Of a stretch of 64,000 nt of DNA, positions 2,725 through 52,955 are shown one piece after another. How positions within the stretch are numbered: the first letter of the stretch is position 1; the number at the start of each line of letters is the position of its first letter. The DNA is from Dimorphilus gyrociliatus (taxonomy: Eukaryota; Animalia; Annelida). Under the pieces are notes generated by a model. That model was not told the origin of the DNA, did no database searches, and saw only the letters and a program-made list of their open reading frames with translations. A program made the translations under genes and the position numbers. The DNA is taken from assembly GCA_904063045.1 (NCBI GenBank), contig CAJFCJ010000020.1, forward strand, positions 798,916-862,915. The letters run 5' to 3'.

Positions 2725-5700
2725 CTAAATACAATATACATTCCAATATATATGTGATTTGGATATTTTGTAACTCAAAGGTTTCGTTTCTTTTGTTTGT
2801 TCATTCAGATAACAAATTCCAGTGTTTACATTCCTATGGACAGAAGAGCAACTTCTTGTTGTTAGACATTCGCTAAGACATTCTAAATCTGACGCCGTTT
2901 TCAATTTAATAATATTCCAATTTTCTAGAATTCTATTCAAGAATGTTTGCACTGGACAATCTGTTATATTAGAATCAATTATTAATATACCAAAGCTATA
3001 CACACTAAAAGTGTACATACTCTTGAAACATTCTTCATTTCTATTGAAATATTTGTAGGAAGAATGATGATGGTAGTGATTCGGTTTTGTTTTTCTACTT
3101 TCCATACTTAGATAGCATTTCTTAGATGTTTTTGAATATTCGGCGGATCTGAATGAGATAATAAGAATTCATTGTTGTAAACTTTTCTATTAGTTTTTAT
3201 CTACCTGCAAATAAAGTTGGCGGTGAGACACGAATACAAGCAAGACTCTTCTGTTTGCTTATTCAGAATCTTTTTATTATAGCCGATTAAATATTGATTG
3301 TTGTGCGAAGTAAAACAGCTATAATGATTCGAATCGTCTTCACATGTTTGCTCGTAATAAATGTAATTGATACTGTTCTTTAAATTTTTAGCGTTTTGCG
3401 AAGAAGTGTATCTACTTAAGTAGCATTTTTTTTGTAGTTTGTGATAGTTAAGCGATCTGAAATGATTAATCGATTAGATATCATTACGTAATTCTTATAA
3501 TTAAGACTTACTTGCACAAATTAGGCTTATTTAAACACAGTTTTAAACATTCATCCTCCGATGAAACCTGTTTCACTAGTTCGTAAGAACCAACAAGATA
3601 ACTATTCGCATATCTCTTATGATAACAATCGGGATTACAGCTAGATTTCTTTTCGAAATAAACGTAGCTGTTATGATTGTTGAATGCTTTTGGATAATGT
3701 TTACTAGTTGATTTGCTTATATAGCACATTTTGGTTTTTCTATTGTAGTTTGCAGATCTGAAAAACGCATAATATAAAAGTTAAAATCATAACATAAAAA
3801 TATTATTTTTAAGTTTCCATCTGAGAGAAAAACTTACTTGCAAAGAGATCTCTTACACAAGAATAGACATTGTTCCTCCGTTAGGCCAAATTTGGATAAG
3901 TAATATTTTTCTTTGAGATATTTTCCGTTGACATGATTAAAACAGGGATAATTTCTAGCGCAAATCTTTTCCCAGTATTTATATTGAGTATTTTCTTTCC
4001 ATAATAGAGGTTTTCTATTGTGTGTCTCCTCGCTTAGATAACATACGTTTGTCTTCTTATTATAATATGCCGACAAACATGAAAATTTCTCCTCTCTTAG
4101 ACATAATTGTTTGCATTCGAGCTCATTCTGGACTTTAGCTTGCTTTTTATTCTGTCCTAATAAATATCTATTATTGTGTTCAGTAAAGTAGCATTCCGGT
4201 TGGCAAACGTGCTTCCTTTCCCAGTAGATTCTATTTTTCGATAGCTGATATGAATCGGGTTTAGATTTCTTAGTTTCTCTTGAAATATAGCAAATTTCCG
4301 TATCCTTGTCATACTCAGCAGATCTGATACAAAAAATCAACACCACCGTTATATAGTACTCTCAATAATTTCCAAATAAACATTATCAACTCACCTACAA
4401 CCTTTAACCGATTTGAGGCAAGACGATTTACAATGCTCCTCCGATGAATCGGATATCGTTTCAATATGATGATTACGCAATGATCTATAAGGGTATTCAT
4501 CAAAGCATTCATCACCGCAGTCAATGTGCCAATGAATATGAGATTTCGATTGTTGAAACGACGAATACTTAGAAATTCTTGTTTCATCGTGTAAATTGCA
4601 TTGTTTCGTTTTGTAATCCCAATCTACCGAACTAAATATAAAAACAATGTAACAAAAGATTAAAAGAAATAAATTTAAAAGATCTAATTTCATTTAATAA
4701 TCTTACATGCAGGAACCAAATGGTTTAGTTTTCAAACAAGTTTTAACGCATTCTATTTCCGACTTTGTTTTTAATGAATCAATTTGGTGGGATGATAAGA
4801 AATATCCAGGGAATGGTATGGCAATACATTCTATAATTGTCGTAAAGATGAAAGAGTGAAATGATTTCCCTTTTTTTATTATGATTAATTTTACCTGGTT
4901 GACAATAATCTTCCTTTTCAAAGTAATTGTAATAATCATTATCTTTGTAGAATTTTGGATGAGAGTCTTTCGTTTTTCTTGATAGATAACAAGTCTTTGT
5001 TTTTTTATTATACGAGACAGATCTAAATGGATCATTACAAAAGTTATATGTTTCAATTCAATTATAAAGTCTATAATTAAGTTACAAACTTGCAAGGTAC
5101 TTCTCCAATTATACATTGTTTTACGCATTCGTCTTCAGTCTTGTCAGTGTATGTGTAAAAATCATCATCCATATATCTATTTGCGTAAGTTTTAAAACAC
5201 GGATAGTTACTTTTGCAGATTTTGTGATAATGGCCAAACACTTTATGATCTTTAAAGCTTTCGTGTTTAGTGAATTTTGATTCTGAACTTAATTTACATT
5301 GCTTCAATTTACTATCGTAATCGAATGATTTACAATGAAATTCGTCAATTGTATAACAAGCCTCCATACATTGTAGAATGGTATGCTTTTTTAAAATTCT
5401 ATTACTGTAGCCTGATAAATACTTTCCCATTGAATATTCGTAATAGCAATTAGAATCGCATTCGTGATTTCTGTACCAATAAACAAAGTTCTTGTTTGAT
5501 TTAAATTCATCTTTCTTGGTTATGTGGGTTTCCTCAGACAAATAGCATATTTCTGATTTTTTATCGTATTGTATAGATTTACAATAACTGTTTTGTAAAC
5601 AGAAACTTTTACAGTTTTCTTCTGTATAACCAACAATTTTTTTATTATATTTTATAAGGTATCTGCCCTGAATTGAATTGAAGCATCCGCATTCCATTCG

Positions 5701-6933
5701 CCAATATACATAATTGTTTGAATTTTTGAATTTTAGCGGGCTTTCCTCTTTACTGGCCAAATTAATATAACATGAGTCAGTCTTTCCGTTCCTTTGTACC
5801 GATCTAAAAGTAGTTGAAAGTTTTGAATGGTAATAAAGTTTTGTTTGAATATAAAAATTGAATATATAAAATCATCTTACCTGCATTTTCCTCCAAATGT
5901 AAGGCATAATTTTAAACACTCCAAATCTGATTTTATATCGTCATACTTCTTTGCATAGCTACCATCAAGGTATCTATTATCGTATCTATTCAATTTGCAA
6001 TTTGACAAACAATGTTTATTTTTCTCAAAGTAAATATAGTTCTGATGTTTGATGTAATTCTTCTTTGGACTTTCGCTTCTTATTTCTTTACTTAAATAAC
6101 AGATTTTAAGAAATTTATTGTATTGAACTGAATGACAATTTCTATTCTGTAGGCAAGTTTCCAAACAATTCTCCAACGATAAGGATGGTAGGCTGGTACT
6201 TTCGTGGATGTTTAATTTTATGTTATCGTATGCTTCATAGCATGGATACGAATGGCAAACTTTTTCAAAATACCAAAGATTTTCAACATTAATTTTGAAT
6301 GGAGAATTGGGTGAATCTCTTGTTTTTTCGCTCAGATAGCATATATTATGCTTACTGTCGTAACTGGCCGCTTTACAATTAAAATCTTTGGCCAAAAAGC
6401 AAGCTTCTTGGCATTCTAGGAAAGTTCTATTCTTTATTATCTTTCTTTTAGCTTGAAGCAGATGTCCTCCCTTCAAAGACTTTATGTAGCAATCTAAGAA
6501 AAGTAATAAGATGTCATTTTAGATATTAACTCTTTTCATTACAAAAAAATAATATTTACTCGCATGGCAATCAGATCTTCTTTGCCAATAAATGTAGTTG
6601 TGACTACTTTTGTAGTAAAGAGGCCTAGTATCTTTAGTTTCCAACGAAAGGGAACATAGTCCAGTCGATCTATCATATTGAACAGATGCGCATTTGTAGT
6701 TTGCATTCAAACAAGCAACTTTACAATCATGAGCATTCTTTTCGAAGCGCTCTTCAACATTTCCCTGTTCTAGATACCAGCCTTCATATCTTTCAAAGCA
6801 GTCATCTAATAAAGTTCATAAAAGTTAGCAATGATACTATTAATTTTCAATTAAACTTACCTGAAGCATCAATCAGTCCAACAGCAATGAAAGTTAGCAG
6901 CCATATGCAAGTTAAAAGTTTTAAAGAATTCAT
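2725..6933 (-). CDS. PAN-1: secreted multi-PAN/Apple protein, 14 domains, multi-exon
   Basis: Exon 1 (6933-6861) encodes signal peptide MNSLKLLTCIWLLTFIAVGLIDAS. It is followed by repeated C-F/Y...C-x3-C...C-x-S...CYL...Y-x-Y/W..C units joined in frame across GT-AG introns, ending YWNVYCI* at 2725. Confidence 0.88.
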
Positions 6934-7483: not shown

Positions 7484-10400
7484 TCAGTGACTACAAAGTA
7501 CATTCCAATAAGTGGACGATGTTGCAGTATGAAAAGCATCCGTTGCAGTATATTTTGTTACTTGATGTAAATCGCATCTTTTGGTTACTTCATTTCTATC
7601 AACTGATAAACAACCAGGTGTAATTAGGCATTCGCTTATACATTCAAGATTAGAAATTGTATAGAACGATTTTAAATCGTAATTTTCCAATTCTTTATGC
7701 AATTGTGTATCAATGGAACAATCTGTTAGTAAAAAAATGAAAACAAATCTATCATTTCTATTTTTAGTCAGTTTCTTAATGGAAATTTACCTAATTTACA
7801 TTCCGATTTACGATGATAATAGATAAATTGACTATTATCTTCATAATTCGAAGGTCTAGTAGTTTTGCTTTCTTTACTTAGATAACATTTTTTAGTAGAA
7901 ATAGAAAATTCAGCAGATCTACAAAAAACACAAGATAAGACATAATCGTTTAATAACTCTGTCGTCGAATAAGAGAATTTTAGTAATATACCTGCATATG
8001 AAATTCTTTGTTGTTAAACAAGCTTCTAAACACGATATTTCAGTTTGATCAGAAAGTGTTTGTGTATTATAGCCATTTATATGTTTCTTTTTATATTTTT
8101 CGAAGCATTTAGAACCTGGACTGGAATTCATTTTACAATTTAATTCATATAGTGAATAATCTTTGTTTGTACGTAACAATTCCGGATTAATATTGAACAT
8201 TTTACTTATAACGCATCTACTAGTTGACTTTTGATATTCAAACGACCTACACCATTCAAAGTAGGTTATGCATAGATTTAGACAATGCTCTTCGGAAGGT
8301 ACTATTTTTGAGTGGTCATTAAATCCTATAAGGTATTTATTAGAAACCTTCTTGAAATAGCAATTAGGATGACAAGATTTCTTCTTTGGTAGATAAACGT
8401 AGTCGTTAGTACCAGCAAACGATACAGCAGGTTTTTCATTATCGGGCAACAAGATCAAGAAACATTCCTTCGTGGAAATTTTATAATTTATCGCGCTTGT
8501 ATGATGAAAAAGAAAATAGAAAGCTTTAGTTAACGACAGTAATTTAATTCTAAATTGTACAACTAACTTGCATATAGCCATATGGCACCATCGTACACAT
8601 TCTTCCTCACTTAGATCAGTCTTTCTGTCGTAATACTTGTTTAAAAACTGTCCTGGATGTCTGTCGAAGCAAAGAAAGTCCTCTCTACATACTTTATCCC
8701 AATAGATATATTGGCTACTTGTTGACCAAATCCAAGGTTTAGAATGTTGCGTTTCGGTACCCAGATAGCACGTTTTCGTTCTTTGATTATATTCAGCCGA
8801 TTTACAAGATGATAAGTATTCAGAGAGACATAACTCTTGACATTCAAACTTATCTACTACTTGAACGGTTCTGACATTCTGACCCATAAGGTAACGATTG
8901 GTATACTTGATCATGTAACAGTCGAATCGGCATATCTCTTTCCTCTCCCAATATATCTTCGTCTCGGATGGTTTATAACCTAATGGCTTAGTTATACTAT
9001 TCTCCTTAGACAAGAAGCATTGATTCTTTGTTTTATCGTATTCCGTAGACCTGATTTTCACTATTGCTTTAGAATTTTGCAAAATACAATCAAAAAAACT
9101 ATTTTATATAAACCTGCAAGTTTCTTCAGAATTTATGCAATGCGAATTGCAATCGTCCTCAGATATATTTTCAATAATTGAATAATCATATCCATCTAAA
9201 GATCTGTAGGGGTGCTCCTTAAAACAAACATTCCCACAAGACACATGAAAGTGCATTGAAGCAATTAAAGTCCTAAACGATCTTGGCTGAGAAAAACGAG
9301 TTTCCTTATGTAAAACACAAGTGAATGTATCTTTAAACCAATCGACAGAACTGTTTAAAGTAAATTATTAATTTTTCATAATAATAAGAAAAGTAAAAAT
9401 TATCTTACTTGCAAGATCCGAAAGGTCTACGGGAGACACACATTTTAATACAATCCATTTCGCTGTCTACCTTCTCACTCAAAATATATTCATCTTTAAG
9501 ATGATAACTAGGAAACGGAAGTACTTTACAATCTAAATTTCGTAATGATATAATATGTTTTATTATTGTTGAGAGAATAATAAGAAAGTAAATTACTCGG
9601 TTGACATTCATCAAGCTTTTGGAAATAATTAAAGTTTTCATTATCAACAAAAGAATCGGGATTTGAATCTTTAGTTTTCCTTGAAATATAACACTTTTCT
9701 GTATTTGAATTGTACGATAAGGATCTGAGATTTAAAATTGAAATTGTTTTAAATTGCTATTCAATTTTGAAATATTCTTTTTGTTAATTAATTACCTGCA
9801 AGTTGTTTCGCTAAGAAGGCACAGTTGAATACACTCTTTTTCACTTTTCCCGCTAAACTGATCAGTTTTATCCTCAAGGAACTTTTTGGAATAAAGTCTA
9901 AAACAAGGATATTTAATTGGGCAAACTTTATGAAAATGCTCGAGATTGATATGTGATAATTTCATTTCTGGTTGTGTATCTTTTGATTCTATGCTAAGTA
10001 CACACTCCCTCTTTTCTCGATTATAGTCGATTGAAAGACATTCAATATCTTCAGCAATGAAGCATTGTTCTAAGCATTTAATGCTTGGAAAAGGTTTAAT
10101 TCTAATGGTATTAAATCCAAGTAAATACTTTTTGTAACTGTAGTCAAAGTAACATTCTAAATCGCATTTCTCACCTCTTTTCCAGTAGACATAATAAGGG
10201 TTTGATACAAAATTTTCAGGTGTTGTTCTATGAGTCTCCGTATTGAGATAGCAGAGTTTTGTTGACCTATCATACTGTACTGACTTACAAAGTATTTTCG
10301 AGGTTAGGCAAGATGCGCAACATTCTTCTTCGGTTCTTCCCGAAATAGTTTCTTCACTATTAATTAAGAATCTACCATCGTACATTTCATCGAAACAAGG

Positions 10401-11471
10401 TAATTGAATTTGAGGAATTTTACATATCTTATGGTAATAATCAAAAGAGTCGCTCGGTTCCCAAAACTGCGATTTAGTATCGTTAGATTCGCTACTTAAT
10501 CTGCATTCTTTCGTATTTTCGTTATATTCAAATGACGAACAATTAATTTGGTTATTAGTTAAGCATTCTTTAATACATAGGTGTTTATTAATCGATATCA
10601 GAACTACATCGTCAAAGCCGATTAGACGCCGCTTTTGAAAATGTTTAAAATAACAATTTGGTTTGCATTCATCATTTCTTAGCCAATAGACGTATTTATC
10701 GTCATTTTTAAAATAAATTGGTGATGTTTTATGAGTTTCAACGTTCAGATAACAAATATTCTCATCTTTTTTGTAATGTGCTGATTTACAAAAGAAATCG
10801 GCTGTTAAACAATAAATACGACAATTTTCCTCATCTAAACCATGAAGTGCTTTATGATGATTTTTCAGATACTTTCCAGTATGAGTATCAGTAAAACAAG
10901 GATATTCAGGTTCTGGAGCATAGCAGATTTTTTGGAAATGCTCTAAATTTGTATGCTCTAAAAAGGCATCATTCTTAGTGTCGTTGCTTTCACTGCTTAA
11001 AATGCATCTTTGCTTGTCTCTATTATAGTCAATTGACAAACAATCTAAATCAGATCTGATCAAACATTCTTCAAGACATTGAAAACTTGAATAAGAATCA
11101 AAAACCACAGTATTGAAACCTAGTAAATACTTTTTAAAAAAGTATTGAAAATAGCAATTTTTGTCACATTGATCATTCCTGAACCAAAAGATATATTTAT
11201 CAGAAGATTTGAATAAGGATGGTTGCGTTAAGTGAGTCTCTTCGTTCAAAAAGCAAGTTTTTGTTTCCAGATTGAACTGAGCGGATTGACACTTAAACTC
11301 GGCGGCTAGGCAAGATCCGAGGCATTCATCTTCTCCTCTTTCAGATATCAATTCTGCATACAATTCAAGATGTTTCCCGGGTATTGAATCAAAACATCTG
11401 CAATCTGCAGAAGCTAGTACAGCTAGTAGAATGAAACTGCGAAGAAAATGCACTTGCCCAACCAGCCGCAT
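7484..11471 (-). CDS. PAN-2: secreted multi-PAN protein, 14 domains (three copies of the 5/6 domain pair, then modules 7-14)
   Basis: True ATG at 11471 with hydrophobic leader MRLVGQVHFLRSFILLAVLASA. A 559-aa first exon is followed by in-frame spliced exons ending YWNVLCSH*. Confidence 0.88.
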
Positions 11472-11746: not shown

Positions 11747-13419
11747 TCAGCACATCTTATGGTAATGGTCAATAAGATGATGTTTCTTAAAATCGAGAGG
11801 CTTCGTATCCTTTGACTCCGAACTCAGTACGCAATTTTTCGTCAAACCATTATAATCAACTGATAGACAGTTGAATGTAGCAGTTGTAAAGCATTTCTCC
11901 AAACATTCTTCTCTACTTAGGGGATTTATCATCAGTGTATTATGACCCAACAAATATTTCTTACGGTAAAACTTAAAATAACAATTAGGATTGCATGCAA
12001 TTGATCTATCCCAATAGGTATAATAGAAATTCGTTTGGAAATGATGAGGAACTGTAAATCTTGTTTCGTCGGATAGGAAGCACACTCCCGTTCTGATATC
12101 GTATTGAGCCGATTTACAATTAAAATCGGCTGTTAGACAAGATAGTTTACATTCTCTTTTTGATTTTCCATGAAGGTATCTGTTGAATTTAGTCAGATAT
12201 TTACCATTTAACTGACTAAAGCAACCGTCGCATTTTAACTGCCAATATTCAAAATCACTAGATGATTTACACTTAAATGGACTTTCAGCCTTGGTTTTCA
12301 AATTTATAAAGCATTCATTCGTCTTTGAATTTCTTTGAACAGATCTATAAATTTCATAAAAGTTTTAAATTTCACATATAATATTCATAAAAGAATAGCT
12401 TACCGACATCCATCAGGATTTTGATAGCACAATTCCAGGCATTTTAAGTTAGAAAAAACAGAATCATACTTGTTTATATAAACTCCATCTAAATATAGAT
12501 TGTTTGAATACTGTAAATTACAAGATGTTGAACATTCAGCACTTTTTTCGTAGTAGACGAATTTAGTGTTATGGATGGTATTTGGAGGAAAAAACGATCT
12601 AACAGTTGAATAAATATAACATTTTTTTGTATGTTTGTTATAGTTTGTTGAACGGCAAAATTTGCTTCTCAAACAATTTTCCATGCAATCTTCTGGCTTT
12701 GCAACAGGTAGAATAACTGCTAAACGCTGTAGTTTTATATCCTCGACAGCGTTGAAACAGGGATAAACGGGGCAAACTCTTTCGAAATACCAACGATAAG
12801 GTTGCAAAGTTTGGAAAATCGCCCCATCTCGATCTAAGCTATTCAAATAGCATGTACTGGTTGAAGCTTTGTAGTTAATGGATTTACATTGAAAACTTTT
12901 TTCAGTTAGGCAGTTTTCTTGGCATCTTAATTCATTTATCATAGATAATGTTTTCACAGGCGTAGCAACCAGAAAGCTATCATGAAATGGTTTCAAATAA
13001 CAATCTATTCAAAAGACAGTAGAGATAAATTACTATAAATAAAAAATGTATGAACATCCTACTTAATAAACATTCTGGTTTTCTCTGCCAGTAGATATAG
13101 CTGTAATTAATTCCGTATTCTAATGGAATAGTATCTTTCGTTTTATCAAATAGGTAACATGTTTTAATTGGTATATTATACTGAAGAGATTTGCAAACAA
13201 ATTTAGCTTCAAGACAGCTAGCCTTACATTTATTTATGTAGCGAGTATAAAAAGTACGAATAGCGAAAGAAGTTGTTAAATATCTTCTGTCGTATCGGTC
13301 ATAGCAGACACCTGGCATACGAAAACCGGTGACAAATTTCAATTATAATACAAGTTTAGTTACATAATACCTGCTTCTGTAAAAGAAATTAGGACAAGTA
13401 AAATTAATAATTTAATCAT
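11747..13419 (-). CDS. PAN-3: secreted PAN protein, 6 domains (equivalent to modules 1-6 of PAN-1)
   Basis: Exon 1 (13419-13371) encodes MIKLLILLVLISFTEAG. Spliced in frame to VCYDRY..., ending HYHKMC* at 11747. Confidence 0.85.
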
Positions 13420-13583
13420 TCTTTTTTCTGTTTTCATTAAAACAACTTTCGGCTTGTATTTTGTAAAAATATATAAAGTATATATATAAAATATATAGTG
13501 CTTCTGGTACAATAAAAACTGAGTACATGAAAGCTACGATCATGGACAATAGTATAGATATATATACAATATTACTTCATATC

Positions 13584-16500: not shown

Positions 16501-16894
16501 TTTCCAAACATTGTCGACTGGAGTAAGAAAGAAATTTATTGTCGTTGTAGCCCAAAAGGTACTTTTTCCAATAATATACAAAATAACAATGTGGTTGACA
16601 TTCCTTCCTTCTATACCAATAGACGTAGTTGTCATTGTTCTTATACGTAGCTGGAGCGGAGAGATGAGTTTCGATATTTAGATAACAGATTTCATTTGTT
16701 CTATCGTATTGAGCCGATTGACATAAGCCTGGGTATGTTAAACAAGACCCGGGACATTCTTCTTCTGTTCGACCATCCACCTTCTTCACATAAGTAGATA
16801 AATGCTTATTTTGATATTCGTCAAAGCATTTGCAGTCTACAAGAGACTGTATAGTCAGAGCCAAGATTGCAACTTGAACAACTATTCGTAGCAT
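13584..16894 (-). CDS. PAN-4: secreted multi-PAN protein, 12 domains
   Basis: ATG at 16894, leader MLRIVVQVAILALTIQSLVDC. In-frame exons end YTYWHLACKN*. CCAAT (16974-16978) and TATATATA (16947-16954) lie upstream. Confidence 0.88.
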
Positions 16895-25134: not shown

Positions 25135-25610
25135 TTGTTCTAAAGATATGTTTGTTGAATATTCAAAAACAAAGAAAAATTGATTTTTACTTTAACAAAA
25201 ATAACTAAAAACCAAAACGATTAAAATCAAAAACTAAGCTTGAATAGTTTGAACATTAGCCTTTTATACTTAATTTAGTACTCTATACTTTCGTATTGTG
25301 CTCATTTTATATTTAGTGTTTAAAACTTTCAAAACCGTTAAAACTATTAGAAAGTTATTAACAAATCGATAACAAAACTTTCTATATTTATTTTAAGAAA
25401 AAAAGTCACATGATCATTATTGAATATTAATTTGATTTATTAAAATTATTTGAACATTTTTGGAACAATTTCATAAGAGGTCAGACAAAAAAAAAAGAGT
25501 ATAAAAAGTGAAATGTCTGGAACCATAGGACTTTGTGATTGAGTAATGTAGCATAGAAGATTTTGAACTGAATTCTAGACTGATTATTCTGAGGAAAAAG
25601 ACTTTGAAAA

Positions 25611-39800: not shown

Positions 39801-42800
39801 AATAGCATAATACAATATATTTAATAGGTCGTTCCATGTATGGAAAGAAAAAAATGAAAATAAAAAATGCGTACTTTCGTTATTTCTCGAAAGAAATAAT
39901 CAATCAAATAAGATATGTTCATCGCCTGAAGATGCTTGTTTCACTGAGAAAACAGGGAAAGCAATACGCTCAAGTCCAATAGCTACGTACAACTTTATCA
40001 ACAAAACGCAATGTTTGAAACTCTGCCTATTATCAAATACCTCTTTCTGCTCGTAATTTATCTCCTTTTATGATATAATTATTGATATTATTTATCATAA
40101 GAATAATAAGTCTTTCCCCTTCAAAAGAGCCGCAAATTACAATTTGGAAACAAAAACGTGTACATTAATACTAGCTAGAAACGCTTCCTCAATTATCTTA
40201 CTTAATGATAGCAGCTATTTCTTTTATGAAAAGAAACAAGAGTGTTTACCAAGTAAGTAGCTATTATCTTTTAAACTGTTAAGGTAAAATGTCATAATAT
40301 ATTCTATTGTTTTTATAAAGAGTGTAGAATTACCGCTTTTCCTGGACATCTTGTTCAAGATCATTTTATTGCAAGATTTTCATCCGATAACTATGTACAT
40401 TGTCTACAACTTTGCATAAAGCAAGGCTATAAAAAATGCAGGTAAATAATAATAAACTAATTTACTATTATTGGATATTTAATCATAAACATATATAAAA
40501 ACAATGAAATGACTATATAATTAGAGGGGTTGATTGGAGTTCTGCAACAAGAAATTGCTATCTTTTGAACGAAACTAAACGATCTTCAATACTTGTTGAT
40601 ATAATAGAGAATATACATTTTACTCACTACGTTATTGAATGCAGTGATGAACCAGAGCGTCAGTATTTCGAAATCCATTAAAAAAACTAAAGTCAATTAA
40701 CTTTTAAGTTTTTCTCTCTAATAAATTAGTCACCAAGTTGGGAATGTGTTTCAAGAAAGTCAGTAAAGCCGTTGTACCTGTAGCTCTAAATAGTTTTGGA
40801 ACGAAAACTGCAGCTGAATGCCTTCTTAAGTGTCTACATTCGAAATCATACTGCTCGTAATAGCTATTTATTTCACCGATCAAATTTTTCATTTTATAAT
40901 GTCATTTATTGCCCAAAAATAGAGCAGCAACTTATGATAAGCGTCTTAAAAACTGCAATATTGGCTATTCGCTAGTACCATCAACATCAACTAACTCTAT
41001 AAGCTATGTTAGGGAAGATTCATGCGGAAAATGTATCACATCTAAATATAACAAATATCTATAATCGAAAAATTTACAAACCTTTTTCCTCCAATAGACT
41101 GTCATATTGAGAAAATTTCAAATGGCTATGCAATGGGATATTCAAGAACAGGTTTAAGATCTGCTTCTAGAATTGAATGCCAATTATCCTGTCTAATACC
41201 CAAAAAACTCGATTTTTATTGCAGGTTAAACTTTTCTGCTTACACTTTTAAATTGCTTTTTATGGTTTTAGTGGTTTTTATTGTTATTTTTTTTAGATCG
41301 GCTTATTATAATCCAAAAAGAAAAACTTGCTTCTTAAATGATGCTAACAAAAATTCGTATAAAGTTCCTTTAGCTCCGTCATTTATTAGCAATATTTACG
41401 AAAATTATATTATTAATTGCCTCCGAAGTCCGAAATCCAGTACGTACTTTCTCTATTATTATGATTATTAACATCAAAAATAGCTATTTATTTACAATTT
41501 TCTTTTCATTTGAAAACAGAAATTGATAAATGTTTTACACATTTTCAAAGAGCTTCGCCATCAAATATCCAATTTGTCGTAAAAACATTAGATCTAGAAG
41601 AATGCCTCGTAAAATGCCTCATATCTTCTTCAAAAGTATTGTAAGAGAAAATTTTCTATTTCGTCTATATAATTACAAAGCGTAAAATGAAAATATAACA
41701 CTCTTTTTCCCCCTCTCCATCCAACTTTATACTCTTTAGATCCTGTCAATATGATTATAAAACCAATAATTGCTATTTTAGTGAAGAATCTAATAAGACA
41801 GAAGAACTTGTAAAAAGTTCTTCATATGATCACTTTCAAAAGATTCCATCATGTCCTTTAAACGGTAATAATGTTAAAATATATATTTTAATGGATATTT
41901 AAAATAACCTCTTCTTCTTCTTCTTCTTCTTCTTCCTCTTATGTATAGGTTGTACCTTTGAAAAAGTAAGTAACCTATTTTGGACAGTTGCATCTATGTC
42001 AAGGAAAAATCATTATGAATGTTTTTACGATTGTTTAGTTTCAGACAATTGCAAGTTTGTTAAAATTTTTCTTTTCTTTAATTAATTATGTTTATATTTA
42101 GAGAAGAAATAAATGACCCTTTGTTTGTTTTCTTTCCTCCTTAATAGATATGTTCACTATGAGGCGGAAACACGAATGTGTACATCCCCGGCTCTTGGTA
42201 ATGTAACTCATGGAGCAAAATTAAATAATGCGTACAAAAAGGTTTGTCAGGGAAAGTTTGTAGATCCTTGTTTTGTTGAAAAGAAGGGATTATATTTGGA
42301 TGGTTGGAATAATAAGATTATTAAAAAATCAAATGAAGAAGATTGTAAAAAAGCTTGTCTAAACGCTCAATTTGATTGCAGGTAGACATTGCTGTTTATT
42401 TATTTTCTTTTGGTAAAATGAAAGCTTTACCTTCTTTCTATTTAACATCCTTGCTATGTAGCTCGGCGGAATTCTCGACAAACGGTCGTACTTGCTACAT
42501 AAGCTCTCATAATAGCACTACAAAGTCGAAGTACATGAAGAAATTATCATTCTATATATATTGGGAGAGAAAAGATCTGTGTCGTCCAGATTGCCATTTT
42601 ATTGAAAAGATGGGCAAGAAAATAACTTCTGCTATATTACATAGCCCAGCCAAATCACTCTACCAATGTCAAACTGCGTGCATGATAAAGAGTAATTGCT
42701 CGTAAGAATATCCTCAAAGTGCCAATTTGAGTATGGTCTAATTTACCATTCTAAAACCCAACAGATCGTTAACCTTCACGAAAAAAGACGGTTGTTTATT

Positions 42801-45800
42801 GAGTGATTCTACGAAATTGTCTAGCCAATCTCGTATTTCAACATGGATAAAATCATGCCCATCCTCAAATAGTAAGTAACCTTTACAAGCTGAAAAGTTG
42901 ATTACACAAAGAGGATGTGAAACTAAGAAATCTTTCATTTACAATTTGACCTATACATTTCTTGTTTTTTCCATAATTAAAAAAAAGCTGACGACTGCTT
43001 CGAATTTTTTACAAAGGATAAAGTTAGAACAGCATCGGTTACACTAAGATTAACAACAGATTCCATCGAGAAGTGTAAACTGCTTTGTTTACAGTATAAG
43101 TGCCCGTTAGTTCTATTGTTTTATTACTTGATATAATTATTTTTTCAACATTTTTCAACTATTTACAGAGCTCTTACCTTTCAAACGAAAAGAGATAAAT
43201 GTCTATTAATGAGTAAAGAATTTTATTACGTAAGATACGGAAAGAGATTAACGTCTCCTGATGAAATACGATTAAATACAAGAGATAAATGCAAAAGTGG
43301 GTAAAAAAAAATAACAAAAAAGAAAAGAACGAAATAACCAATTAACTTTCATTTATTAACTAATTACTATTTATAGTTTGTAGAGTGAAGCAAGTACACA
43401 ATAAATACTTTCCTATTAATGGTAGGAAAGTTATTAGACCAGTATATTCACCTTATTCTTGTTTGTTAAAATGCCTAAAAGAAAAGTCATTCAAGTGCTC
43501 GTAAGTTTAACTATTATTCAAGATATCACAACTAAAAATAAACTATTTTAGACTGATTCATTTCAAATTGGGAAATCCAGTTTGTACTTTAAGCTCTGAA
43601 ATGATTAACTTTTCTTCGAGCGGAATAGATTCCCCGAAAAATGAATATATTGCAATAAATTGCGATTATAACGGTAATAACTGTATAAGATATACATATT
43701 TTTATAAACGATTATTACTGACCTCGTTTCTCAGAATATTGCTTTAAGCGGCTGGACGGAAAGTTTCTTAGTGGCTTAAATACTCGTACTATATTATCGT
43801 CAAGTGAAGAGAAATGTAAACTAGCTTGTATATCGGAAAGAAAATTCCTTTGTAGATCTTGTGATTTTTATAAGCCTGATAAGCATTGTTACCTAAGCAC
43901 TTCGACGAGACAATCCAATGCAGCCCAGTATTCATCTAGTGCAAACTTTATTCATTTTGAAAGATTACCAGCTTGTCGATTTGGTTGTTCATTCGATTCT
44001 AAAATATTAACACATGAGGTAAAATATTCCAGAAAATTACATGGTATGACCAGCTTCGATTGTAAAGCAGCTTGCATAGTCACAAATGATTGCCAGTAAG
44101 TTAAAATATACCAACAATCTTTAGTAAATTGATAATCTAAACTAACTAAACAGCGGAATTGTACTATTGAATAATGGTACTTGTCTCCTCTCATCAAATT
44201 CTTCTGGAGTTGTTAAAAAATTTCCCTCGCCTGTCGCTACTACAAAACTGAATTGCAAACCGGCTGAAAGTAAAATTATTCTAATATCTATACCACTAAT
44301 ATTAAACTATTATATCTTTTAATCTGTTTAGCTGATTGTTTTACTATGAAAGTTGGCGTAAAAGTTTTAGATCAACCTATTAAGAGTTATATATTGCAAA
44401 ATGAAACTGCGTGTAGGATGGCTTGCCTCGACGAAATTGAATTTGAATGCAGGTATAAACAATAGTCAAATATGAAAGAAATGTACAATTCTTCAATAAT
44501 CTTTTGTTTTTTTCAAATATAGAATAGTCGCATTCTATCGGAACTCTGGAACCTGTAATTTATACTTTACTAAAAATGCCGAATTGTCTAAATCATTTCC
44601 CTCAACTGTTGTCTTTTCAAAACTTACGGAATGCCAGAAGGGTTGTGGATTTAGAACAATATACAAAAGAGCATTATCCGATAGTTCATCTTTTATAAAA
44701 TTAAAGAGCAATAGTTTAGAAAGCTGTAAATCGATATGTTTAAGGAAGAATAGAACAGATTGTATGTAAGTATATAATTATCATAAAATATGTAACAAAT
44801 AAGGTATTTGTATTAATTAATAAAGTTAATAAATTCATTTAAACAGTGGTATATATTACGACCGTAGACGTCGTATATGTAATTTGATAAAGAAAACTAA
44901 AAAAGTACTTTATTCACATTATAATTCGAATTACGTTTATGCTAGTTTGGACTGCAGTAATAAAAAACGTAACATTTTCTGATTTACCAAACTTAATTAT
45001 GCTAATTTCATGTGATTTTTAATTACTTTTCTAGGTCATTGCTTTACGAAATATGATTCACATTATTCAATTGGTCATAAAAAAGTCATTAAAGCCTCAA
45101 ATGAGACTGAATGTACAAATAGTTGTATGAAAGAGATAACCTTCTATTGTAGGTAAGTATACGTAATTAGAGTAAATAGAACAATTAATGAAATTTGTGT
45201 TTCCTTATTAGAGCTTGCCAATATAATATAAAACGGAGAACATGTTCTTTATTTAAGAATATCACTTCCCGTCATTTAGTCAATGATGATTTTACATTTT
45301 GGAAAAGATTAGACACATGCAAATATAGTTAGTCCTATTAATTAATTAAAACACAAGTATATAACTAAATGTGTTCTTAAACTATTGTTATTCCTTTAGA
45401 TTGTTATTTGAAAGAATCTAAAGGCTACTTCCTAAGTGTTACGAACAAAATATATCATCGCTCTATCGACATAGAAGTATGCAAAGAAAAATGTATGAAT
45501 GAAACAGCCTTCATTTGCCTGTACTATAAATATACAGTATATTTATATATTCTTACTTTTACCTGACTCTTCTTAGGTCGGCCGATTATGATTTAATATC
45601 AAGAACATGCGCTCTGAGCATTGAAAGTCAATCAACGAAGCCGAAGTTCTTTATAAAAAGAGAAAGCTATATCCACTGGGATAAAACTTGCAATGGAGTA
45701 GATTGGGATTGTTAGTAATAGTTTTCTTGAATTTTTCTTAACAGGAAATGTGCACAATTATATAATTTCACGTTTCTACAAACAGCTGATCCTTGTTTCC

Positions 45801-48800
45801 TCTCTTTTAACAATATGACGGTTCGTTCTGTTGCCTCGGAAGTTGTTAAGTTTTCAAATCCTAAAGATTGTAAACAGAGATGCATGAATAGTACAAAATT
45901 TGTATGTTCAGGAGCAACTTTTTCATCAAAGAAGCTAACTTGTACGCTTTATAATAACACGAAACCATCATTGAAGAAAGATACATATATACATACACTA
46001 AATCACTATTATTACTCTCTAAAACAAATCTGCAAACCTGCATTAGGTGTTAGCTGTTTTATGCAGGAATTTTCTAATAGAGAAACTGTAACGCATTCAA
46101 AGAAATCACTAAAAGCGTCGACCCTTCGCCGATGTCAAATGCTATGCTTCGCTGAAACAGACTTCATCTGTACCGCAATAAGCTTTCAAGAAAATAGCCG
46201 AAATTGTAGATTATATGAGACAAAAGAAGAAAGTATCCTTTCATCACTCCTTCAGGCAACTGGCTCAATATTTTCGATAAAACGTTGCGTAAATAAAAAT
46301 GGTCTGTTTAAAAGAATTTTATATATTAAAGCACTCAACTTTTCTGAATGTCAAATTCTGACCTTTTAGACGAATGTTTTACAACTCAAGAAGTCCATAT
46401 TTGGAAAGACTATAGTGTTTATCTATCGTCAAATTTTTGGTCATGTAGAGCTTTATGTATCGAAGATTCAAAGTGTAGAGCTTTTATTTTTATCAATTCA
46501 ACTTGTCATCTAAGTGGAACAATACCAATTAAAAAATTTGGCGAAGATGGATTAACCGGTCATATAAAGAATAATTGCGCTGATCGTAACTAACTTTCCA
46601 TCATTTTATTTGTTATTAATACTATTAATGTTTAACTTTCTTTAACTTTACACTTCCCAGTTTGCACAATTAAGGAAATAAGCAGTCTTCACACTTCAAG
46701 CCAGGATATTCAGTCAATTCGAGCAATATCAAAAGCAGAATGTATAAAGGCATTTTTACAATCGAATTACTCATTAGTGAAGTAAATATATTTGTAGATG
46801 TTGTGATACTATTCTCATTTTCAATCAAATAATATTTTCAGATCAGCAGAATACAACTCAGACTCAAGAAATTGTTATCTTAAACGAAAAGATATATATT
46901 CAGCATCTCAAACATATAAATTCAGTGGATCACATGCTTATTTTCAAAGAGATTGCCCTCATGAACGTTAGTAGACAATATTTTCATTTCATTAACTATC
47001 TTTACACTTCTTGGAAAACAGACAGGTGCTTCAGACAACAACGTGGTTATCATATGAAGGGCTCTTACATTAAAGCTATTTATTTAGATTTGATAAAGGA
47101 GTGTGAAGAGGAATGCCACAAGGATGAAAATTGCTTGTTTGTATTCAATATATCCATTAAATATTAATCAATTAATTACCATTTTTTCTCCTAAAAATAA
47201 AAGGTCAATAGACTATAATGGATCAGACAATCTATGCGTTTTACATTCCGATTCCAAAGCAACTAAACCTATTTTATTCGAACCACATAATACAACCACA
47301 TATTCTGAAAAAACAATATGTGACCAAATTCCTGGTTGCTTCAAAGTATTCATGAACTCTTATGTTAATCTTCGATTCAGTAAAATAGTTAAAGCTGTTA
47401 CTGCCGAAAGTTGCAAAAAGTACTGCTTGTCAACTAAATATTTCTATTGCAGGTGAAGGAATAGTTAATGATAATAATTGATTAGTTTAATAAAAAATGA
47501 TCATTGCTTGTTCATTAAAGATCAGCTATATATAGAGCTAAAGACAACAAATGTATTATAAGTGCTCAAGGTGATATCAGGACTCGTTTAAGAAAACGTC
47601 CTGGTTCTGTTTACTTACATAGAACTTTATGCAAAGGTAGGTAACATAGGAAGAGAAATTTGTTACATAAAATACTCTATTTTTAAATCTCTGTTTCTTA
47701 AACAGATTGTGAAATGGTTAAACATGTTAATAAAACGATACCAAAAGAACTATATCCAGGAAATAGATATCAATATTGTCCTTCATTTGAGGAATGTTCT
47801 AAAATATGCTTTTATCAGTTCCAACCTGAATGTCGGTTAGTATAATGATATATTTCGTAGGTTTGAATAATTTTAAAATTAATCTTTTTTTTATCAATGC
47901 TTTCCTCTGTCCGTTTGCCTCTTTTTTCTCTTTCTGTCTGTCATTCTTTCGCTAATATCTGCTATTTTTCTACTTACTCGCAGCTCAGCTTTATATAACA
48001 AGAGGAGAAGAACATGCAGACTTTTGTCGAATTCTAATGGAACCTGGAGCAGTAAATTGATATCTGATCCTAATTATATTTATTTCGAAAAGAAATGCAA
48101 GGGTTTATCCGGTAATTTTAATAAGATTTATTCATTTTTCTCTTCACCAAACTGCAACGTGTACAACATTATTGTTTCTTTCGTTTAAAGATAAATGCGA
48201 CTATGTTTATAGAAATAATTGGCTTTTAAAAAAATACTATAAATCTACTATTGTACCGAATGCAGATGTATGTAGTCGGTATTGTTTGGTAGACAGTTGC
48301 AAATCATTCTCCATTTCTTCAATACATAATTCATCTAGTTTGGTCTGCTATCTAAGCACTTATAATCGTCTTAGAGCGATTAGTAGTTTTGTTCAGAGTA
48401 ATATATCGACCCATTATGAAAAAGTATGCCAACAACATAAATTTAGTAAGTTGCACTTAAGTTATTTATAGTCTTGATTAAACATACATATTATATTTAT
48501 TATATTTACACTTATTAGTATGTAAGATTACTGAATTAGGACCAAAGACGTTATTAGGTCCCACTAAAAGTGATTGGATTAAATATAAAGGAACATCGAA
48601 ATTAACTTGTCAAATACTTTGCGATACTGAGAAATCGTTTGTTTGTACTGGAGCCAAATTCGATATTCAAAGCGGTGACTGCTTCCTCTACAAAAATCCT
48701 ATAAACACACCTAATTATGAATTTAAAAGTTCTACTACAAGTTTGTTTTTCATTAGAAACTGTGATGGAAAAAGTGAGTTTAAACAGAAAAATACGACAC

Positions 48801-50393
48801 ATTAAACAATAATGCCCTAAAATTATCATTTTATTTTTAGCTATTGTCCCTCCTAAGACTGTCAAATGCCCCCCACATTGGCACTATGTACATGAAACGA
48901 AGAGCTGCTACCATTTAAAGCATAACATAGCTTATAATTATGAGACAGCAAGCTCTTACTGTTACGCGAATGGAGGGAATTTAATTTCTTATAAAGATGA
49001 AGAGGAATTTAATAGTTTAACATCCACCTTAGAGAGGTAAGAGGATAAAATGAATATTGGTTAAATAAGCACAAATATTGACATGAACTAAATTAGATTG
49101 AGATTAAACCATGGCATCAATTCGGAAGTTTTGTGGTGGACTTCTGGACAGCTAACAGAAAAAGGTTGGAATTGGCAAGAATTAGATCCATTGGGTGAGC
49201 AGTTAGACCTATTTTTCTCTTTTTGTTTAATAAAATGAATGAAAATAGATTAAATGATTAAAGCTGTACTTTTTTAATTATTCTGTTCGTTAACTATTTA
49301 AAACAGCGAATCAGAGCTAATTCTTATGAGCTTTTCTTATTTTCAATCTTAATATTACTTAGCCTACAAGAAAAGGATATATCCACATCCCATTACTTTA
49401 ACAAAATGGTTTAAGAAGGAACCAAAAGATAAAGCAAATCACATGGTTATGAAATACGGAAGTAGAAAAGAACATATCATACGATGGGGATCAATGGCAG
49501 TAACAGATAAAACTTTAGCCTTAGCTTTATGTAAGGCAGATCCTGATCAAGGTTGAAAAACTTATCATAATTTGCTTGAATAAGCACCTATCATACAACT
49601 CCAGTATGATTATCTTTTTTTGTTTTTAACTAATCAGCTACAGAACAGTGTTGGAAAAATACATGTTTGAATAATGGAGTTTGTGTGGAAAAAAATCTCA
49701 CTTCTCCAAAAATTCCCACCATAGAATATTCAGGTCGAGGAATGGACGACGATGAAGAGGATGCTGAATCTACCATTTCGCTTTTTCATTCAAAAGTTAC
49801 AAAACTCGCTCAAGGTTACAAATGCCGTTGTATCAATTCAACTGGAAATAATTGCGAGTTACAATCACCTACTTTTAATGAGTCACTATCTGCTCTTTAT
49901 AAAGATTTCTTTATATCTAAAGTGGCTATGTCATTCGAAAAAGCGAGTCTTTATTGTAAGAGTAACTCTGCTTCCATGTTGATCTTGAGCACAGAAATGG
50001 AAGAAGAATACTGGACATCAGTTTTAGAAAGAGATAATCTCCAAGGAGTATATTGGTTGTCCGCAAAGAGACGGGACAATAAATGGTATTGGCTTGCTAG
50101 TTCTAAACATCTGACTGGTAAGTATTAAAAAGAAACTTTTATTTACCTTAATTAAAACTATGAGTAACAAAATACATTTAGCAAATAATGAAAGTTTTGT
50201 AATAGATTCTTTTACTATAAATAAATTAGCCTCATTCGAAATGACCTATACGAATTGGCATGAAAATGAACCGAACAATTACATGCATTCGGAATCTGCT
50301 GCTGTATTATGGTATACAGAGAAAGACGGTTGGAAATGGGCTGATGCAAATGAAAGGAACCTTTATCCATTCGTATGCGTTTCAATGAAATAA
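36805..50393 (+). CDS. PAN-11: giant secreted protein, ~3,100 aa: signal peptide, 33 PAN domains, C-type lectin, EGF-like, C-type lectin
   Basis: Leader MKLLLTCSVILLLPFLGEA. I traced the many exons with compatible splice phases and found no internal stop or second signal peptide. C-terminal KCPPHW...SCY...YC..NGGNL (CTL), CWKNTCLNNGVC...CRC..GNNC (EGF), FEKASLYC...WLS...NWHENEPN...WKWAD...FVC* (CTL). Individual splice choices are uncertain. Confidence 0.78.
41911..41935. repeat. (CTT)n microsatellite in a PAN-11 intron
   Basis: About 8 units read directly. Confidence 0.8.

Positions 50394-52890: not shown

Positions 52891-52955
<65 letters not shown>

What the first reader, a model, noticed from the sequence alone, without database searches (positions are those of the whole stretch)
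2725..50393. 48-kb cluster of 11 secreted PAN/Apple-only genes (~126 domains): candidate undescribed extracellular matrix or glycan-binding system
Seen: 11 genes, each with its own signal-peptide exon, carrying 14, 14, 6, 12, 8, 4, 6, 4, 6, 19 and 33 six-Cys PAN domains. None has a transmembrane segment, protease or ZP domain. Established: animal PAN/Apple domains normally occur in a few copies attached to proteases/kringles (prekallikrein, factor XI, plasminogen, HGF) or to ZP domains (nematode NOAH-type apical matrix proteins), and they bind proteins or glycans. Inference: a lineage-specific family of long, soluble, multivalent PAN polymers co-deployed as a bulk secretion (cuticle, mucus, egg cocoon or adhesive) or as an immune recognition array.
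Basis: partly seen in the sequence, partly recalled or inferred. Interest (0 to 1): 0.88.

Follow-up and report, generated by a model that had tools for sequence, protein, structure and literature searches.

The report
Cluster of secreted all-PAN-domain protein genes
A tiny marine worm (Dimorphilus gyrociliatus) has eleven neighbouring, actively transcribed genes for secreted proteins built almost entirely from 4 to 33 back-to-back copies of one small binding module (PAN/Apple). The design is real, conserved and unstudied, and its job, probably cross-linking a secreted matrix, is still a guess.

Summary
The window is Dimorphilus gyrociliatus (annelid) DNA. My own HMM and splice-aware gene models recover 11 genes with 14, 14, 6, 12, 8, 4, 6, 4, 6, 19 and 33 six-Cys PAN domains.

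- **Architecture:** each gene starts with a signal peptide, and none has a TM segment. Ten are PAN from the signal peptide to the stop codon, with no linkers. The eleventh (g11) is not PAN-only: it ends in C-type lectin–EGF–C-type lectin.
- **Family and fold:** Pfam PAN_1 matches are strong. An AlphaFold di-domain model (pLDDT 96) matches the plasminogen, HGF, factor XI and MIC4 folds.
- **Transcription:** RNA contigs confirm seven introns and show that g5, g6 and g7 are separate transcripts, where the public annotation fuses g6 to g5. g5 and g6 are far deeper than g7.
- **Distribution:** the family is nearly confined to this worm and one unnamed relative. The relative keeps g6–g10 in the same order, with pN 0.27 against pS 0.74 and 58 of 58 Cys conserved.
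- **Function:** no evidence on tissue or ligand was obtainable. My best guess is stiff multivalent rods that cross-link a secreted matrix. A fast-evolving immune array is disfavoured.

No paper describes these genes. The scan had already noted g11 (s1-081082) and other PAN chains elsewhere in this genome.

The parts
2725..6933 (-). g1: 12 exons, 1160 aa, signal peptide + 14 PAN domains, net charge about +48
   Evidence: The public model P0003 fuses it to a DNAJC28-like gene downstream. The 3' end is not RNA-tested.
7484..11471 (-). g2: 8 exons, 1172 aa, signal peptide + 14 PAN domains, slightly acidic
   Evidence: My model is identical to DgyrCDS12445 / P0002. Pfam PAN_1 E 2.5e-48 on exon 1.
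11747..13437 (-). g3: 4 exons, 504 aa, signal peptide + 6 PAN domains, basic
   Evidence: Only 146 bp lie downstream of the g4 stop, and the public annotation fuses g4+g3 (1451 aa). This is the least certain boundary.
13584..16894 (-). g4: 6 exons, 1002 aa, signal peptide + 12 PAN domains, net charge about +59
   Evidence: Domains 1-8 are collinear with g5 domains 1-8 at 48-72% identity.
18644..20803 (-). g5: 3 exons, 681 aa, signal peptide + 8 PAN domains, net charge +16; very deep RNA contigs
   Evidence: Spliced RNA contigs in two runs show introns 19017-19075 and 20679-20733, and the contig ends near 20816. The model matches these.
21238..22417 (-). g6: 3 exons, 352 aa, signal peptide + 4 PAN domains, net charge -16; very deep RNA contigs
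   Evidence: Introns 21963-22022 and 22278-22338. A poly(A) tail at 21134 sits about 20 nt after an AATAAA. Depth is zero at 22600-23000. The public annotation wrongly fuses g6 to g5 (P0005).
23003..25134 (-). g7: 7 exons, 576 aa, signal peptide + 6 PAN domains, with a 45-aa insert between domains 2 and 3
   Evidence: Introns 23257-23322, 24049-24110 and 24383-24450 are seen in RNA contigs of two runs. Model.
24111..24382 (-). g7 exon that carries the acidic SGSGSG / 6-Cys insert (candidate glycosaminoglycan attachment site)
   Evidence: The exon is present in spliced RNA contigs. Insert sequence. Glycosaminoglycan attachment is inference only.
25135..25610 (.). 476-bp head-to-head intergenic region between g7 (-) and g8 (+)
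   Evidence: Start codons at 25134 and 25611. The same head-to-head arrangement is kept in the relative's contig L002.
25611..27069 (+). g8: 7 exons, 350 aa, signal peptide + 4 PAN domains, acidic
   Evidence: An orthologue with 61-72% aa identity lies in L002.
27492..29659 (+). g9: 9 exons, 537 aa, signal peptide + 6 PAN domains, net charge -25
   Evidence: The model is identical to library protein P0014. Also.
30182..36096 (+). g10: 15 exons, 1568 aa, signal peptide + 19 PAN domains, net charge +52; includes a 2.3-kb intron-less exon
   Evidence: Pfam PAN_1 E 3.4e-68 with 9 stretches on the 775-aa exon. Compared with orthologue P0001: 56% aa identity, pN 0.27, pS 0.74, 58/58 Cys kept.
36805..50393 (+). 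g11: 57 exons, about 3040 aa, signal peptide + 33 diverged PAN domains + lectin tail, 38 N-glycosylation sequons in the PAN part
   Evidence: One continuous open exon chain. The public annotation splits it into DgyrCDS12452 and 12453, and 12453 has no signal peptide and starts inside the array. RNA run X2 holds 0.54 of the sampled words of 39.6-49.6 kb. Not tested with laid reads.
48841..50393 (+). g11 C-terminal tail: C-type lectin - EGF-like - C-type lectin. The second lectin domain has EPN but WAD in place of WND, and lacks the C2-C3 cysteine pair.
   Evidence: Phase-1 splice 48773 to 48841. Pfam Lectin_C at 23.6 and 21.8 bits on the two exons. Annotated P0011 carries PAN_1 + Lectin_C at E 3e-11.

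Best explanation
SHOWN. Eleven tandem genes are arranged as seven on the minus strand and four on the plus strand, meeting head-to-head at 25.1-25.6 kb. They encode secreted chains of 4-33 six-cysteine PAN/Apple domains. The last Cys of one domain lies only 1-3 residues before the first Cys of the next. Ten of the mature proteins are PAN domains from the signal-peptide end to the stop codon. The eleventh adds a lectin-EGF-lectin tail. The array arose by duplication of whole multi-domain genes. The ancestral unit was two exons per domain, and the core genes (g1, g2, g4, g5, g7, g10) show an A-B two-domain super-repeat. The array is conserved gene-for-gene in a related species and is under purifying selection. 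g5, g6 and g7 are transcribed and spliced as separate mRNAs, and g11 is also transcribed.

INFERRED (about 45-50%). The proteins act as stiff, protease-resistant, multivalent extracellular binding rods. They would cross-link or organise a secreted matrix such as acidic mucus or glycosaminoglycan, cuticular collagen, or the egg-capsule wall. Seven members are polycations and four are polyanions, so they may also bind one another. Each domain position would have its own partner, so the chain is not a uniform repeat polymer.
For: - Domains and models. The models are validated by 7 of 7 RNA introns and by identity to two public or library protein models (P0002, P0014).
- Secretion: signal peptides and no TM segment.
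- Fold: AF2 di-domain model with pLDDT 95.8 and pTM 0.87. Foldseek hits plasminogen PAN (rmsd 1.5-1.9 A), the HGF N domain, FXI/prekallikrein apple domains, TgMIC4, SML-2 and LET-653. The profile hits plasminogen, HGF and leech LAPP in the PDB.
- Separate, abundant transcripts: a poly(A) site at 21134, zero depth at 22600-23000, and g5/g6 depth 5-7 times (X1) or 10-30 times (X2) that of g7.
- Own promoters: a TATAWA box at -72 to -58 in 7 of 11 genes.
- Conservation: g6-g10 lie in the same order in L002, with pN 0.27 against pS 0.74 and 58/58 Cys kept. A complete mRNA-like contig encodes an 8-PAN protein 52% identical to g5, from another organism.
- Positional identity of domains.
- Material-like chemistry: Cys 7-8%, Tyr 6-10% (4.3% in g7), Lys 8-12% in the basic members. 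N-glycosylation sequons are depleted in g1-g7 and g10 (15 observed against about 70 expected). Net charges are +16 to +131 in seven genes and -10 to -25 in four.
- Known PAN ligands fit a matrix role: heparin for the HGF N domain (PDB titles), collagen for leech LAPP (PMC7191736), a fibrillar luminal matrix for the LET-653 PAN domains (PMC4970718), and galactose for MIC4.
Against: No spatial, stage or proteomic evidence was obtainable, so the tissue, the secretion and the ligands are all unknown. Contig word depth is a poor measure of expression, and no housekeeping gene could be laid for comparison. Charge complementarity and sequon depletion are suggestive only. No shared upstream motif supports co-regulation. 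The rod shape rests on one two-domain AF2 model whose coordinates I could not inspect. The disulfide pairing is assumed from the family pattern.
Confidence: 0.5

Rival explanations
1. Humoral immune or microbe-recognition lectins. The PAN chains, and g11's C-type lectin tail, would bind microbial glycans and agglutinate or coat bacteria on the worm's surface or in its gut.
For: PAN/Apple domains can be lectins (TgMIC4 and SML-2 fold hits). g11 ends in C-type lectin domains, one with an EPN motif. The genome paper says most expanded families in this species are local duplicates implicated in immunity (PMC7854359). Multivalency suits agglutination.
Against: One-to-one orthologues in conserved order in a relative with saturated synonymous change, dN well below dS, and every Cys kept. 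There is no sign of rapid birth and death or of diversifying domains, because domains keep positional identity across paralogues. The very high constitutive RNA depth of g5 and g6 fits a structural product better. The EPN lectin domain has WAD in place of WND and lacks a canonical disulfide.
Confidence: 0.15
2. Soluble binders with a non-structural role. Examples are pharyngeal or gut gland secretions that capture food or biofilm glycans, or scaffolds or inhibitors that dock extracellular proteases. Factor XI and prekallikrein apple domains dock kininogen, and leech LAPP blocks collagen.
For: Fold and profile matches to FXI/prekallikrein apple domains and to leech anti-platelet protein. Each domain position is individually conserved, which would suit a set of different specific partners. 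The proteins are secreted and soluble.
Against: There is no protease, inhibitor or enzyme domain in or beside the genes. Up to 19-33 linker-less domains, oppositely charged family members and sequon depletion are unusual for soluble regulators. No data point to the gut or pharynx.
Confidence: 0.15
3. There are fewer, larger genes than eleven. As in the public annotation, neighbours such as g4+g3, g6+g5 and g1+DNAJC28 would be single transcription units, and the internal 'signal peptides' would be incidental.
For: The public annotation has 1451-aa, 1012-aa and 1285-aa fused models. g4's first canonical poly(A) signal lies beyond g3's start codon, and g1 has none within 260 nt of its stop.
Against: For g6/g5 the fusion is contradicted by RNA: a poly(A) tail at 21134, a near-empty 300-bp gap, and separate contigs. 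The fused model puts g5's signal peptide in mid-protein. Every unit has an in-frame stop right after a complete last domain plus a classical signal peptide. Seven of eleven have a TATA box at a fixed distance. A related organism yields a stand-alone mRNA-like contig for an 8-PAN protein.
Confidence: 0.08

Closest known systems
Apicomplexan microneme Apple-domain lectins (Toxoplasma MIC4 with 6 Apple domains, Sarcocystis SML-2, Eimeria MIC5)
   Same: These are secreted proteins made only of tandem PAN/Apple domains. The fold matches at E about 3e-7 to 1e-5. They are multivalent glycan (galactose) binders.
   Different: They come from protists and are not orthologues (about 15-18% identity). They have fewer domains, act inside an adhesin complex for host-cell invasion, and are not in a gene cluster. 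Sugar binding by the worm proteins is untested.
PAN + ZP apical-matrix proteins (C. elegans LET-653 and NOAH-type; arthropod PAN + cuticlin-N/ZP proteins)
   Same: Animal extracellular-matrix proteins with tandem PAN_1 domains. LET-653 is the best Swiss-Prot structural hit, and its PAN domains bind a fibrillar luminal matrix (PMC4970718). The arthropod proteins are the nearest non-dinophilid sequence hits.
   Different: Those proteins polymerise through a ZP/CUT_N module and often have mucin-like regions. g1-g10 have no ZP, no linker and no tail at all. The A-B alternation of the core worm genes is absent from the arthropod proteins.
Vertebrate PAN/Apple proteins (plasminogen, HGF, factor XI, prekallikrein)
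   Same: Same fold for the single domain (rmsd 1.5-2.8 A) and the same six-Cys apple pattern. The HGF N domain and the FXI apple domains bind heparin and protein ligands.
   Different: They have 1-4 PAN domains attached to kringles or a serine protease. In FXI the four apples form a disc. The worm di-domain does not superpose as a pair on any of them (rmsd 10-13 A, TM 0.4 or less).
Leech anti-platelet protein (LAPP, PDB 1i8n)
   Same: An annelid, secreted, PAN-only protein. It is hit by the family profile (E 4e-4) and binds collagens I, III and IV (PMC7191736).
   Different: It is a single domain in a blood-feeding secretion and is not a multi-domain chain. There is no evidence of orthology.
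Uncharacterised multi-PAN giants (e.g. Octopus sinensis LOC118764742, 2643 aa)
   Same: More than 20 PAN_1 domains in one secreted-type lophotrochozoan protein.
   Different: It also contains Sushi repeats, is only about 31% identical over one stretch, has no known cluster, and has no known function either.

Membership tests
PAN/Apple domain superfamily (Pfam PAN_1, PF00024) | Significant match to the family HMM above the curated cut-off | tested here: met
   162-226 bits against a cut-off of 21.4 on long exons, with 4-9 stretches each. g11 exons score 39-52 bits.
PAN/Apple domain superfamily (Pfam PAN_1, PF00024) | The PAN fold: an alpha-helix packed on an antiparallel beta-sheet | tested here: met
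   AF2 model with pLDDT 95.8. Foldseek probability 1.00 to plasminogen PAN, the HGF N domain, FXI/prekallikrein apple domains, MIC4 and SML-2.
PAN/Apple domain superfamily (Pfam PAN_1, PF00024) | Apple-type six-cysteine pattern forming C1-C6, C2-C5 and C3-C4 disulfides | tested here: inconclusive
   Six Cys per domain sit at invariant or near-invariant columns. All 58 are kept in the orthologue. The connectivity could not be read because no model coordinates were available.
Factor XI / prekallikrein-type Apple proteases | Four Apple domains followed by a trypsin-like serine protease domain | tested here: not met
   Only PAN families are hit in the exons. The models are PAN wall-to-wall, with no tail.
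PAN + ZP apical-matrix proteins (LET-653 / NOAH / nompA type) | A C-terminal ZP (or CUT_N + ZP) polymerisation module, usually with a membrane anchor or cleavage site | tested here: not met
   g1-g10 have no residues after the last PAN domain. The g11 tail is lectin-EGF-lectin. There is no TM segment.
Apicomplexan Apple-only microneme lectins (MIC4 type) | A secreted protein composed only of tandem Apple domains | tested here: met
   g1-g10. This is an architectural resemblance only. Identity is about 15% and the lineage is different.
Apicomplexan Apple-only microneme lectins (MIC4 type) | Galactose-specific carbohydrate binding by an Apple domain | not testable with these tools
   Needs a glycan array or binding assay on recombinant protein.
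Gel-forming mucins | Long Pro/Thr/Ser-rich O-glycosylated regions and VWD/C8/TIL assemblies | tested here: not met
   There are no inter-domain regions. Only PAN families are found. N-glycosylation sequons are depleted, not enriched, in g1-g7 and g10.
C-type lectin domain (g11 tail only) | Lectin_C HMM match and the Ca2+/sugar-binding motifs EPN/QPD + WND with the canonical disulfides | tested here: inconclusive
   Lectin_C scores 23.6 and 21.8 bits on the two exons of the last domain, and E 3e-11 on annotated P0011. EPN is present, but WND reads WAD and the C2-C3 cysteine pair is missing.

The most novel reading that the evidence does not exclude
The cluster encodes the protein parts of an undescribed kind of animal extracellular material. 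Linker-less, disulfide-stapled PAN rods of opposite net charge (for example g5 at +16 and g6 at -16) would co-assemble, with or without sulfated glycans or collagen. The product would be the worm's egg-capsule wall, adhesive or cuticle matrix. That would make PAN a structural building block in its own right, and not just an accessory binding module.
Probability: 0.2. Interest if true: 0.75.

Novelty: new variant of a known kind. Interest (0 to 1): 0.5.

Why it matters
PAN/Apple is usually treated as an accessory binding module on proteases, growth factors or ZP matrix proteins. Here an animal with one of the most streamlined annelid genomes (73.8 Mb) spends about 33 kb of coding sequence in one 48-kb block on proteins that are nothing but PAN domains. 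It keeps them gene-for-gene in a relative and transcribes at least two of them very heavily.

That makes the cluster a good entry point to two questions: what PAN domains bind in invertebrate matrices, and how a linker-less disulfide-rich domain chain behaves as a material.

There is also a practical result. Four public gene models covering seven of the eleven genes are wrong (three fusions and one split), which would distort any expression or orthology analysis that uses them.

Tried and rejected
- **Single-sequence AF2** of a three-domain piece failed (pLDDT 38). It was replaced by a 66-sequence alignment.
- **First gene finder** without an intron penalty over-spliced the long exons. It was fixed with a penalty and validated on RNA junctions.
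- **Word-indexed protein search** found only 2 relatives. The exhaustive phmmer search was needed.
- **Literature:** no paper links D. gyrociliatus with PAN domains, none uses the DgyrCDS identifiers, and the text-held supplements of the genome paper and the Nature 2023 paper have no entry for these genes or for PF00024. Searches for PAN/Apple in annelid proteomes, mucus, adhesive or capsule papers gave only leech saliva and C. elegans LET-653.
- **Shared promoter motif:** no k-mer is shared among the 11 upstream regions beyond chance.
- **Other features:** no tRNA in the window, and nothing coding in the 1.75-kb g4-g5 gap.
- **Stage or tissue expression** could not be obtained.
- **A/B domain alternation** is clear only in g1, g2, g4, g5, g7 and g10. 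It does not hold for g3, g6, g8, g9 or g11.
- **Identity of the related species** (runs SRR23372228, SRR23372216, SRR23372229; JGI 3300022595) could not be established.

Full report
**Source and observation**

The window is AT-rich (about 30% GC) animal DNA. A protein search with the 775-aa exon at 30657-32981 returned DgyrCDS12445 of Dimorphilus gyrociliatus. Its contig, GCA_904063045.1 CAJFCJ010000020.1, holds the window.

Six long ORFs between 7.9 and 33 kb hit Pfam PAN_1 at E 1.7e-25 to 3.4e-68, with up to nine stretches each and no other family except weak PAN_4. I built an HMM from the window's own domains and scanned all six frames. It found 64 domains on the minus strand (2731-24946) and about 62 on the plus strand (25755-48769), and essentially nothing elsewhere. 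Exactly eleven classical signal-peptide starts lie in the gaps between the domain runs.

**Gene models**

I wrote a small exon-chaining gene finder that uses a codon log-odds score, splice-site matrices learnt from the HMM-anchored junctions, and an intron penalty. Three results validate it:
- It reproduces all seven introns seen in RNA for g5-g7.
- It gives g2 identical to the public protein P0002.
- It gives g9 identical to P0014.

The models have 1160, 1172, 504, 1002, 681, 352, 576, 350, 537, 1568 and 3040 residues.

In g1-g10 the first domain starts right after the signal peptide. Domain envelopes abut or overlap by a few residues, and the stop codon follows the last domain directly. The last Cys of one domain lies 1-3 residues before the first Cys of the next, so there are no linkers. 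No TM-like segment follows the signal peptide.

There are two exceptions to 'PAN-only':
- g7 has a 45-aa acidic Ser-Gly/Cys insert.
- g11 continues through a phase-1 splice (48773 to 48841) into C-type lectin–EGF–C-type lectin, ending at 50393. The public model DgyrCDS12453 makes the same PAN-to-lectin join.

**RNA evidence**

Two runs hold the region. One is a coral metatranscriptome in which the worm is evidently a contaminant (about 33 base differences from the window). The other is a 2017 run of 'organism A'. Their contigs are spliced with GT..AG introns on the minus strand at 19017-19075, 20679-20733, 21963-22022, 22277/8-22337/8, 23257-23322, 24049-24110 and 24383-24450.

A poly(A) tail is attached at 21134, about 20 nt after an AATAAA. 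Depth almost vanishes between g6 and g5 and is zero at 22600-23000. g5, g6 and g7 are therefore separate mRNAs. The public 1012-aa model that runs g6 into g5, with g5's signal peptide in mid-protein, is a fusion artefact.

Contig depth of g5 and g6 is about 5-7 times (X1) and roughly 10-30 times (X2) that of g7. The tool warns that this is only a rough guide to expression.

For g11, the same RNA run holds 0.54 of the sampled words of 39.6-49.6 kb, close to the exon fraction. The public annotation splits g11 into DgyrCDS12452 and 12453. The latter has no signal peptide and starts inside the domain array.

Seven of the eleven genes have a TATAWA box 58-72 nt upstream of the ATG, against 5% expected per gene. 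The g4|g3 boundary (146 bp apart, fused in the annotation) and the g1|DNAJC28 boundary are inferred, not shown.

**Anatomy and history**

Introns fall into two classes:
- phase 2 in mid-domain (HMM positions about 36-48, some 63 introns);
- phase 1 at the domain border (some 50 introns).

The ancestral unit was therefore two exons per domain. The big exons of g2, g4, g5 and g10 reflect intron loss.

Domains resemble the positionally equivalent domain of a paralogue more than their own neighbours. For example, g4 domains 1-8 match g5 domains 1-8 at 48-72% identity, whereas neighbours within a gene share 25-45%. Whole multi-domain genes were duplicated, and the domains are old and individually maintained. 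In g1, g2, g4, g5, g7 and g10 the best within-gene match nearly always has the same parity, which indicates an A-B two-domain super-repeat. This does not hold in g3, g6, g8, g9 or g11.

**Fold and family**

A 66-sequence alignment of di-domains gave an AF2 model of g5 domains 3-4 with pLDDT 95.8 and pTM 0.87.
- Single domains superpose on plasminogen PAN (1.5-1.9 A) and the HGF N domain (2.4-2.8 A).
- The pair hits prekallikrein and factor XI apple domains, Toxoplasma MIC4, Sarcocystis SML-2 and C. elegans LET-653, but with rmsd 10-13 A.
- No AlphaFold DB or ESM Atlas cluster representative matches the pair better than TM 0.58. The inter-domain packing therefore looks family-specific.
- The sequence profile finds plasminogen, HGF and leech anti-platelet protein in the PDB.

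**Distribution**

phmmer of g2 against 1.84 billion cluster representatives found only 225 proteins at E<=1e-3 and 16 at E<=1e-30. The strong hits I traced are this worm's paralogues or proteins from Logan and JGI contigs of one or more unnamed relatives. More distant hits are arthropod PAN + cuticlin-N/ZP proteins, an Octopus protein with more than 20 PAN domains plus Sushi, and a hemichordate 'plasminogen-like' protein.

A 14-kb contig of the relative (29% GC) carries orthologues of g6(-), g7(-), g8(+), g9(+) and g10(+) in the same order and orientation, at 39-72% aa identity. For the large g10 exon, pN is 0.27 and pS is 0.74 (saturated), and all 58 Cys are conserved. A 2.2-kb JGI contig is a complete mRNA-like sequence for an 8-PAN protein, 52% identical to g5.

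**Chemistry**

- The proteins have 7-8% Cys, mostly 6-10% Tyr (4.3% in g7), and 8-12% Lys in the basic members.
- Seven are polycations: g1 +48, g3 +23, g4 +59, g5 +16, g7 +18, g10 +52, g11 +131.
- Four are polyanions: g2 -10, g6 -16, g8 -13, g9 -25.
- N-glycosylation sequons are strongly depleted in g1-g7 and g10 (15 observed against about 70 expected from shuffles) but not in g11 (38 against 27).

**Interpretation**

The shown facts fit a conserved set of secreted, stiff, multivalent binding chains, with at least two members made in bulk. From what PAN domains are known to bind, I infer that they cross-link or organise a secreted matrix such as mucus, cuticle or egg capsule, and perhaps also bind one another through opposite charge. 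The known ligands are:
- heparin, for the HGF N domain (PDB entries);
- collagen, for leech LAPP (PMC7191736);
- a fibrillar luminal matrix, for LET-653 (PMC4970718);
- galactose, for MIC4.

I put this reading at about 45-50%.

An immune lectin array (about 15%) is disfavoured by one-to-one orthology, conserved order and purifying selection. A soluble regulatory or feeding role (about 15%) cannot be excluded. The 'fewer, fused genes' reading of the public annotation (about 8%) is refuted for g6/g5 and is unlikely for the rest.

**Novelty**

The genes are in the public annotation as unnamed products, partly mis-modelled. I found no paper on them. PAN domains, multi-PAN proteins and PAN-only lectins are all known. 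What is new is an animal family of linker-less, PAN-only chains of up to 19 domains (33 with a lectin tail), arranged as a conserved 11-gene cluster. I rate it a new variant of a known kind, of moderate interest until tissue and ligand are known.

Earlier notes of this scan already traced g11 as one gene with a lectin tail (s1-081082), flagged the g7 insert (s1-082932), and listed other PAN-chain proteins in this genome (s1-080450, s1-081083).

Noticed in passing
window 18644-22417; also 11747-16894, 1547-6933 and 36805-50393: Public gene models of this region are wrong in four places. g6 is fused to g5 (1012 aa), g4 to g3 (1451 aa), and g1 to a DNAJC28-like gene (1285 aa). g11 is split into DgyrCDS12452 and DgyrCDS12453. 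RNA refutes the g6+g5 fusion.
   Followed up: partly
window 24111-24382 (-): A g7 exon carries an acidic DDSGSGSG stretch followed by six extra cysteines, between PAN domains 2 and 3. The Ser-Gly run next to acidic residues looks like a glycosaminoglycan attachment site. The exon is present in spliced RNA.
   Followed up: partly
window 20053-20145 (-): A minor RNA contig in run X2 skips 91 nt inside the large g5 exon (CT..AC ends, depth about 990 against about 40,000). The skip shifts the reading frame, so it is probably a rare aberrant splice.
   Followed up: no
window 18600-24590: A 2024 coral metatranscriptome holds full-length spliced g5, g6 and g7 transcripts that differ from the window at about 33 bases. 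A D. gyrociliatus strain evidently lived in that coral sample or aquarium.
   Followed up: no
window 55336-56709 (-): Intron-less polyubiquitin gene with six ubiquitin repeats (Pfam ubiquitin E 5e-198).
   Followed up: no
window 60719-61570 (+): An ORF with a Jiraiya (TMEM221-like) domain at E 5e-15. It lies in the only GC-rich stretch of the window (41% GC at 60-62 kb).
   Followed up: no
window 382-750 (+) and 1547-2293 (-): An exon with an interferon-regulatory-factor DNA-binding domain (E 3e-26), and a DNAJC28-like gene with its own ATG at 2293. Both lie just beyond the g1 end of the cluster.
   Followed up: no
window 52820-52990: A (CT/GA)n microsatellite, seen as SLSLSL / ERERER in the ORF translations.
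   Followed up: no
L004 (JGI 3300022595, 2194 nt); L002, L003, L005, L006 (Logan SRR23372228/216/229): An unnamed relative, or more than one, has orthologues of most cluster genes. These include a complete mRNA-like contig for an 8-PAN protein and a 14-kb genomic contig with g6-g10 in the same order. The species could not be identified with the tools.
   Followed up: partly
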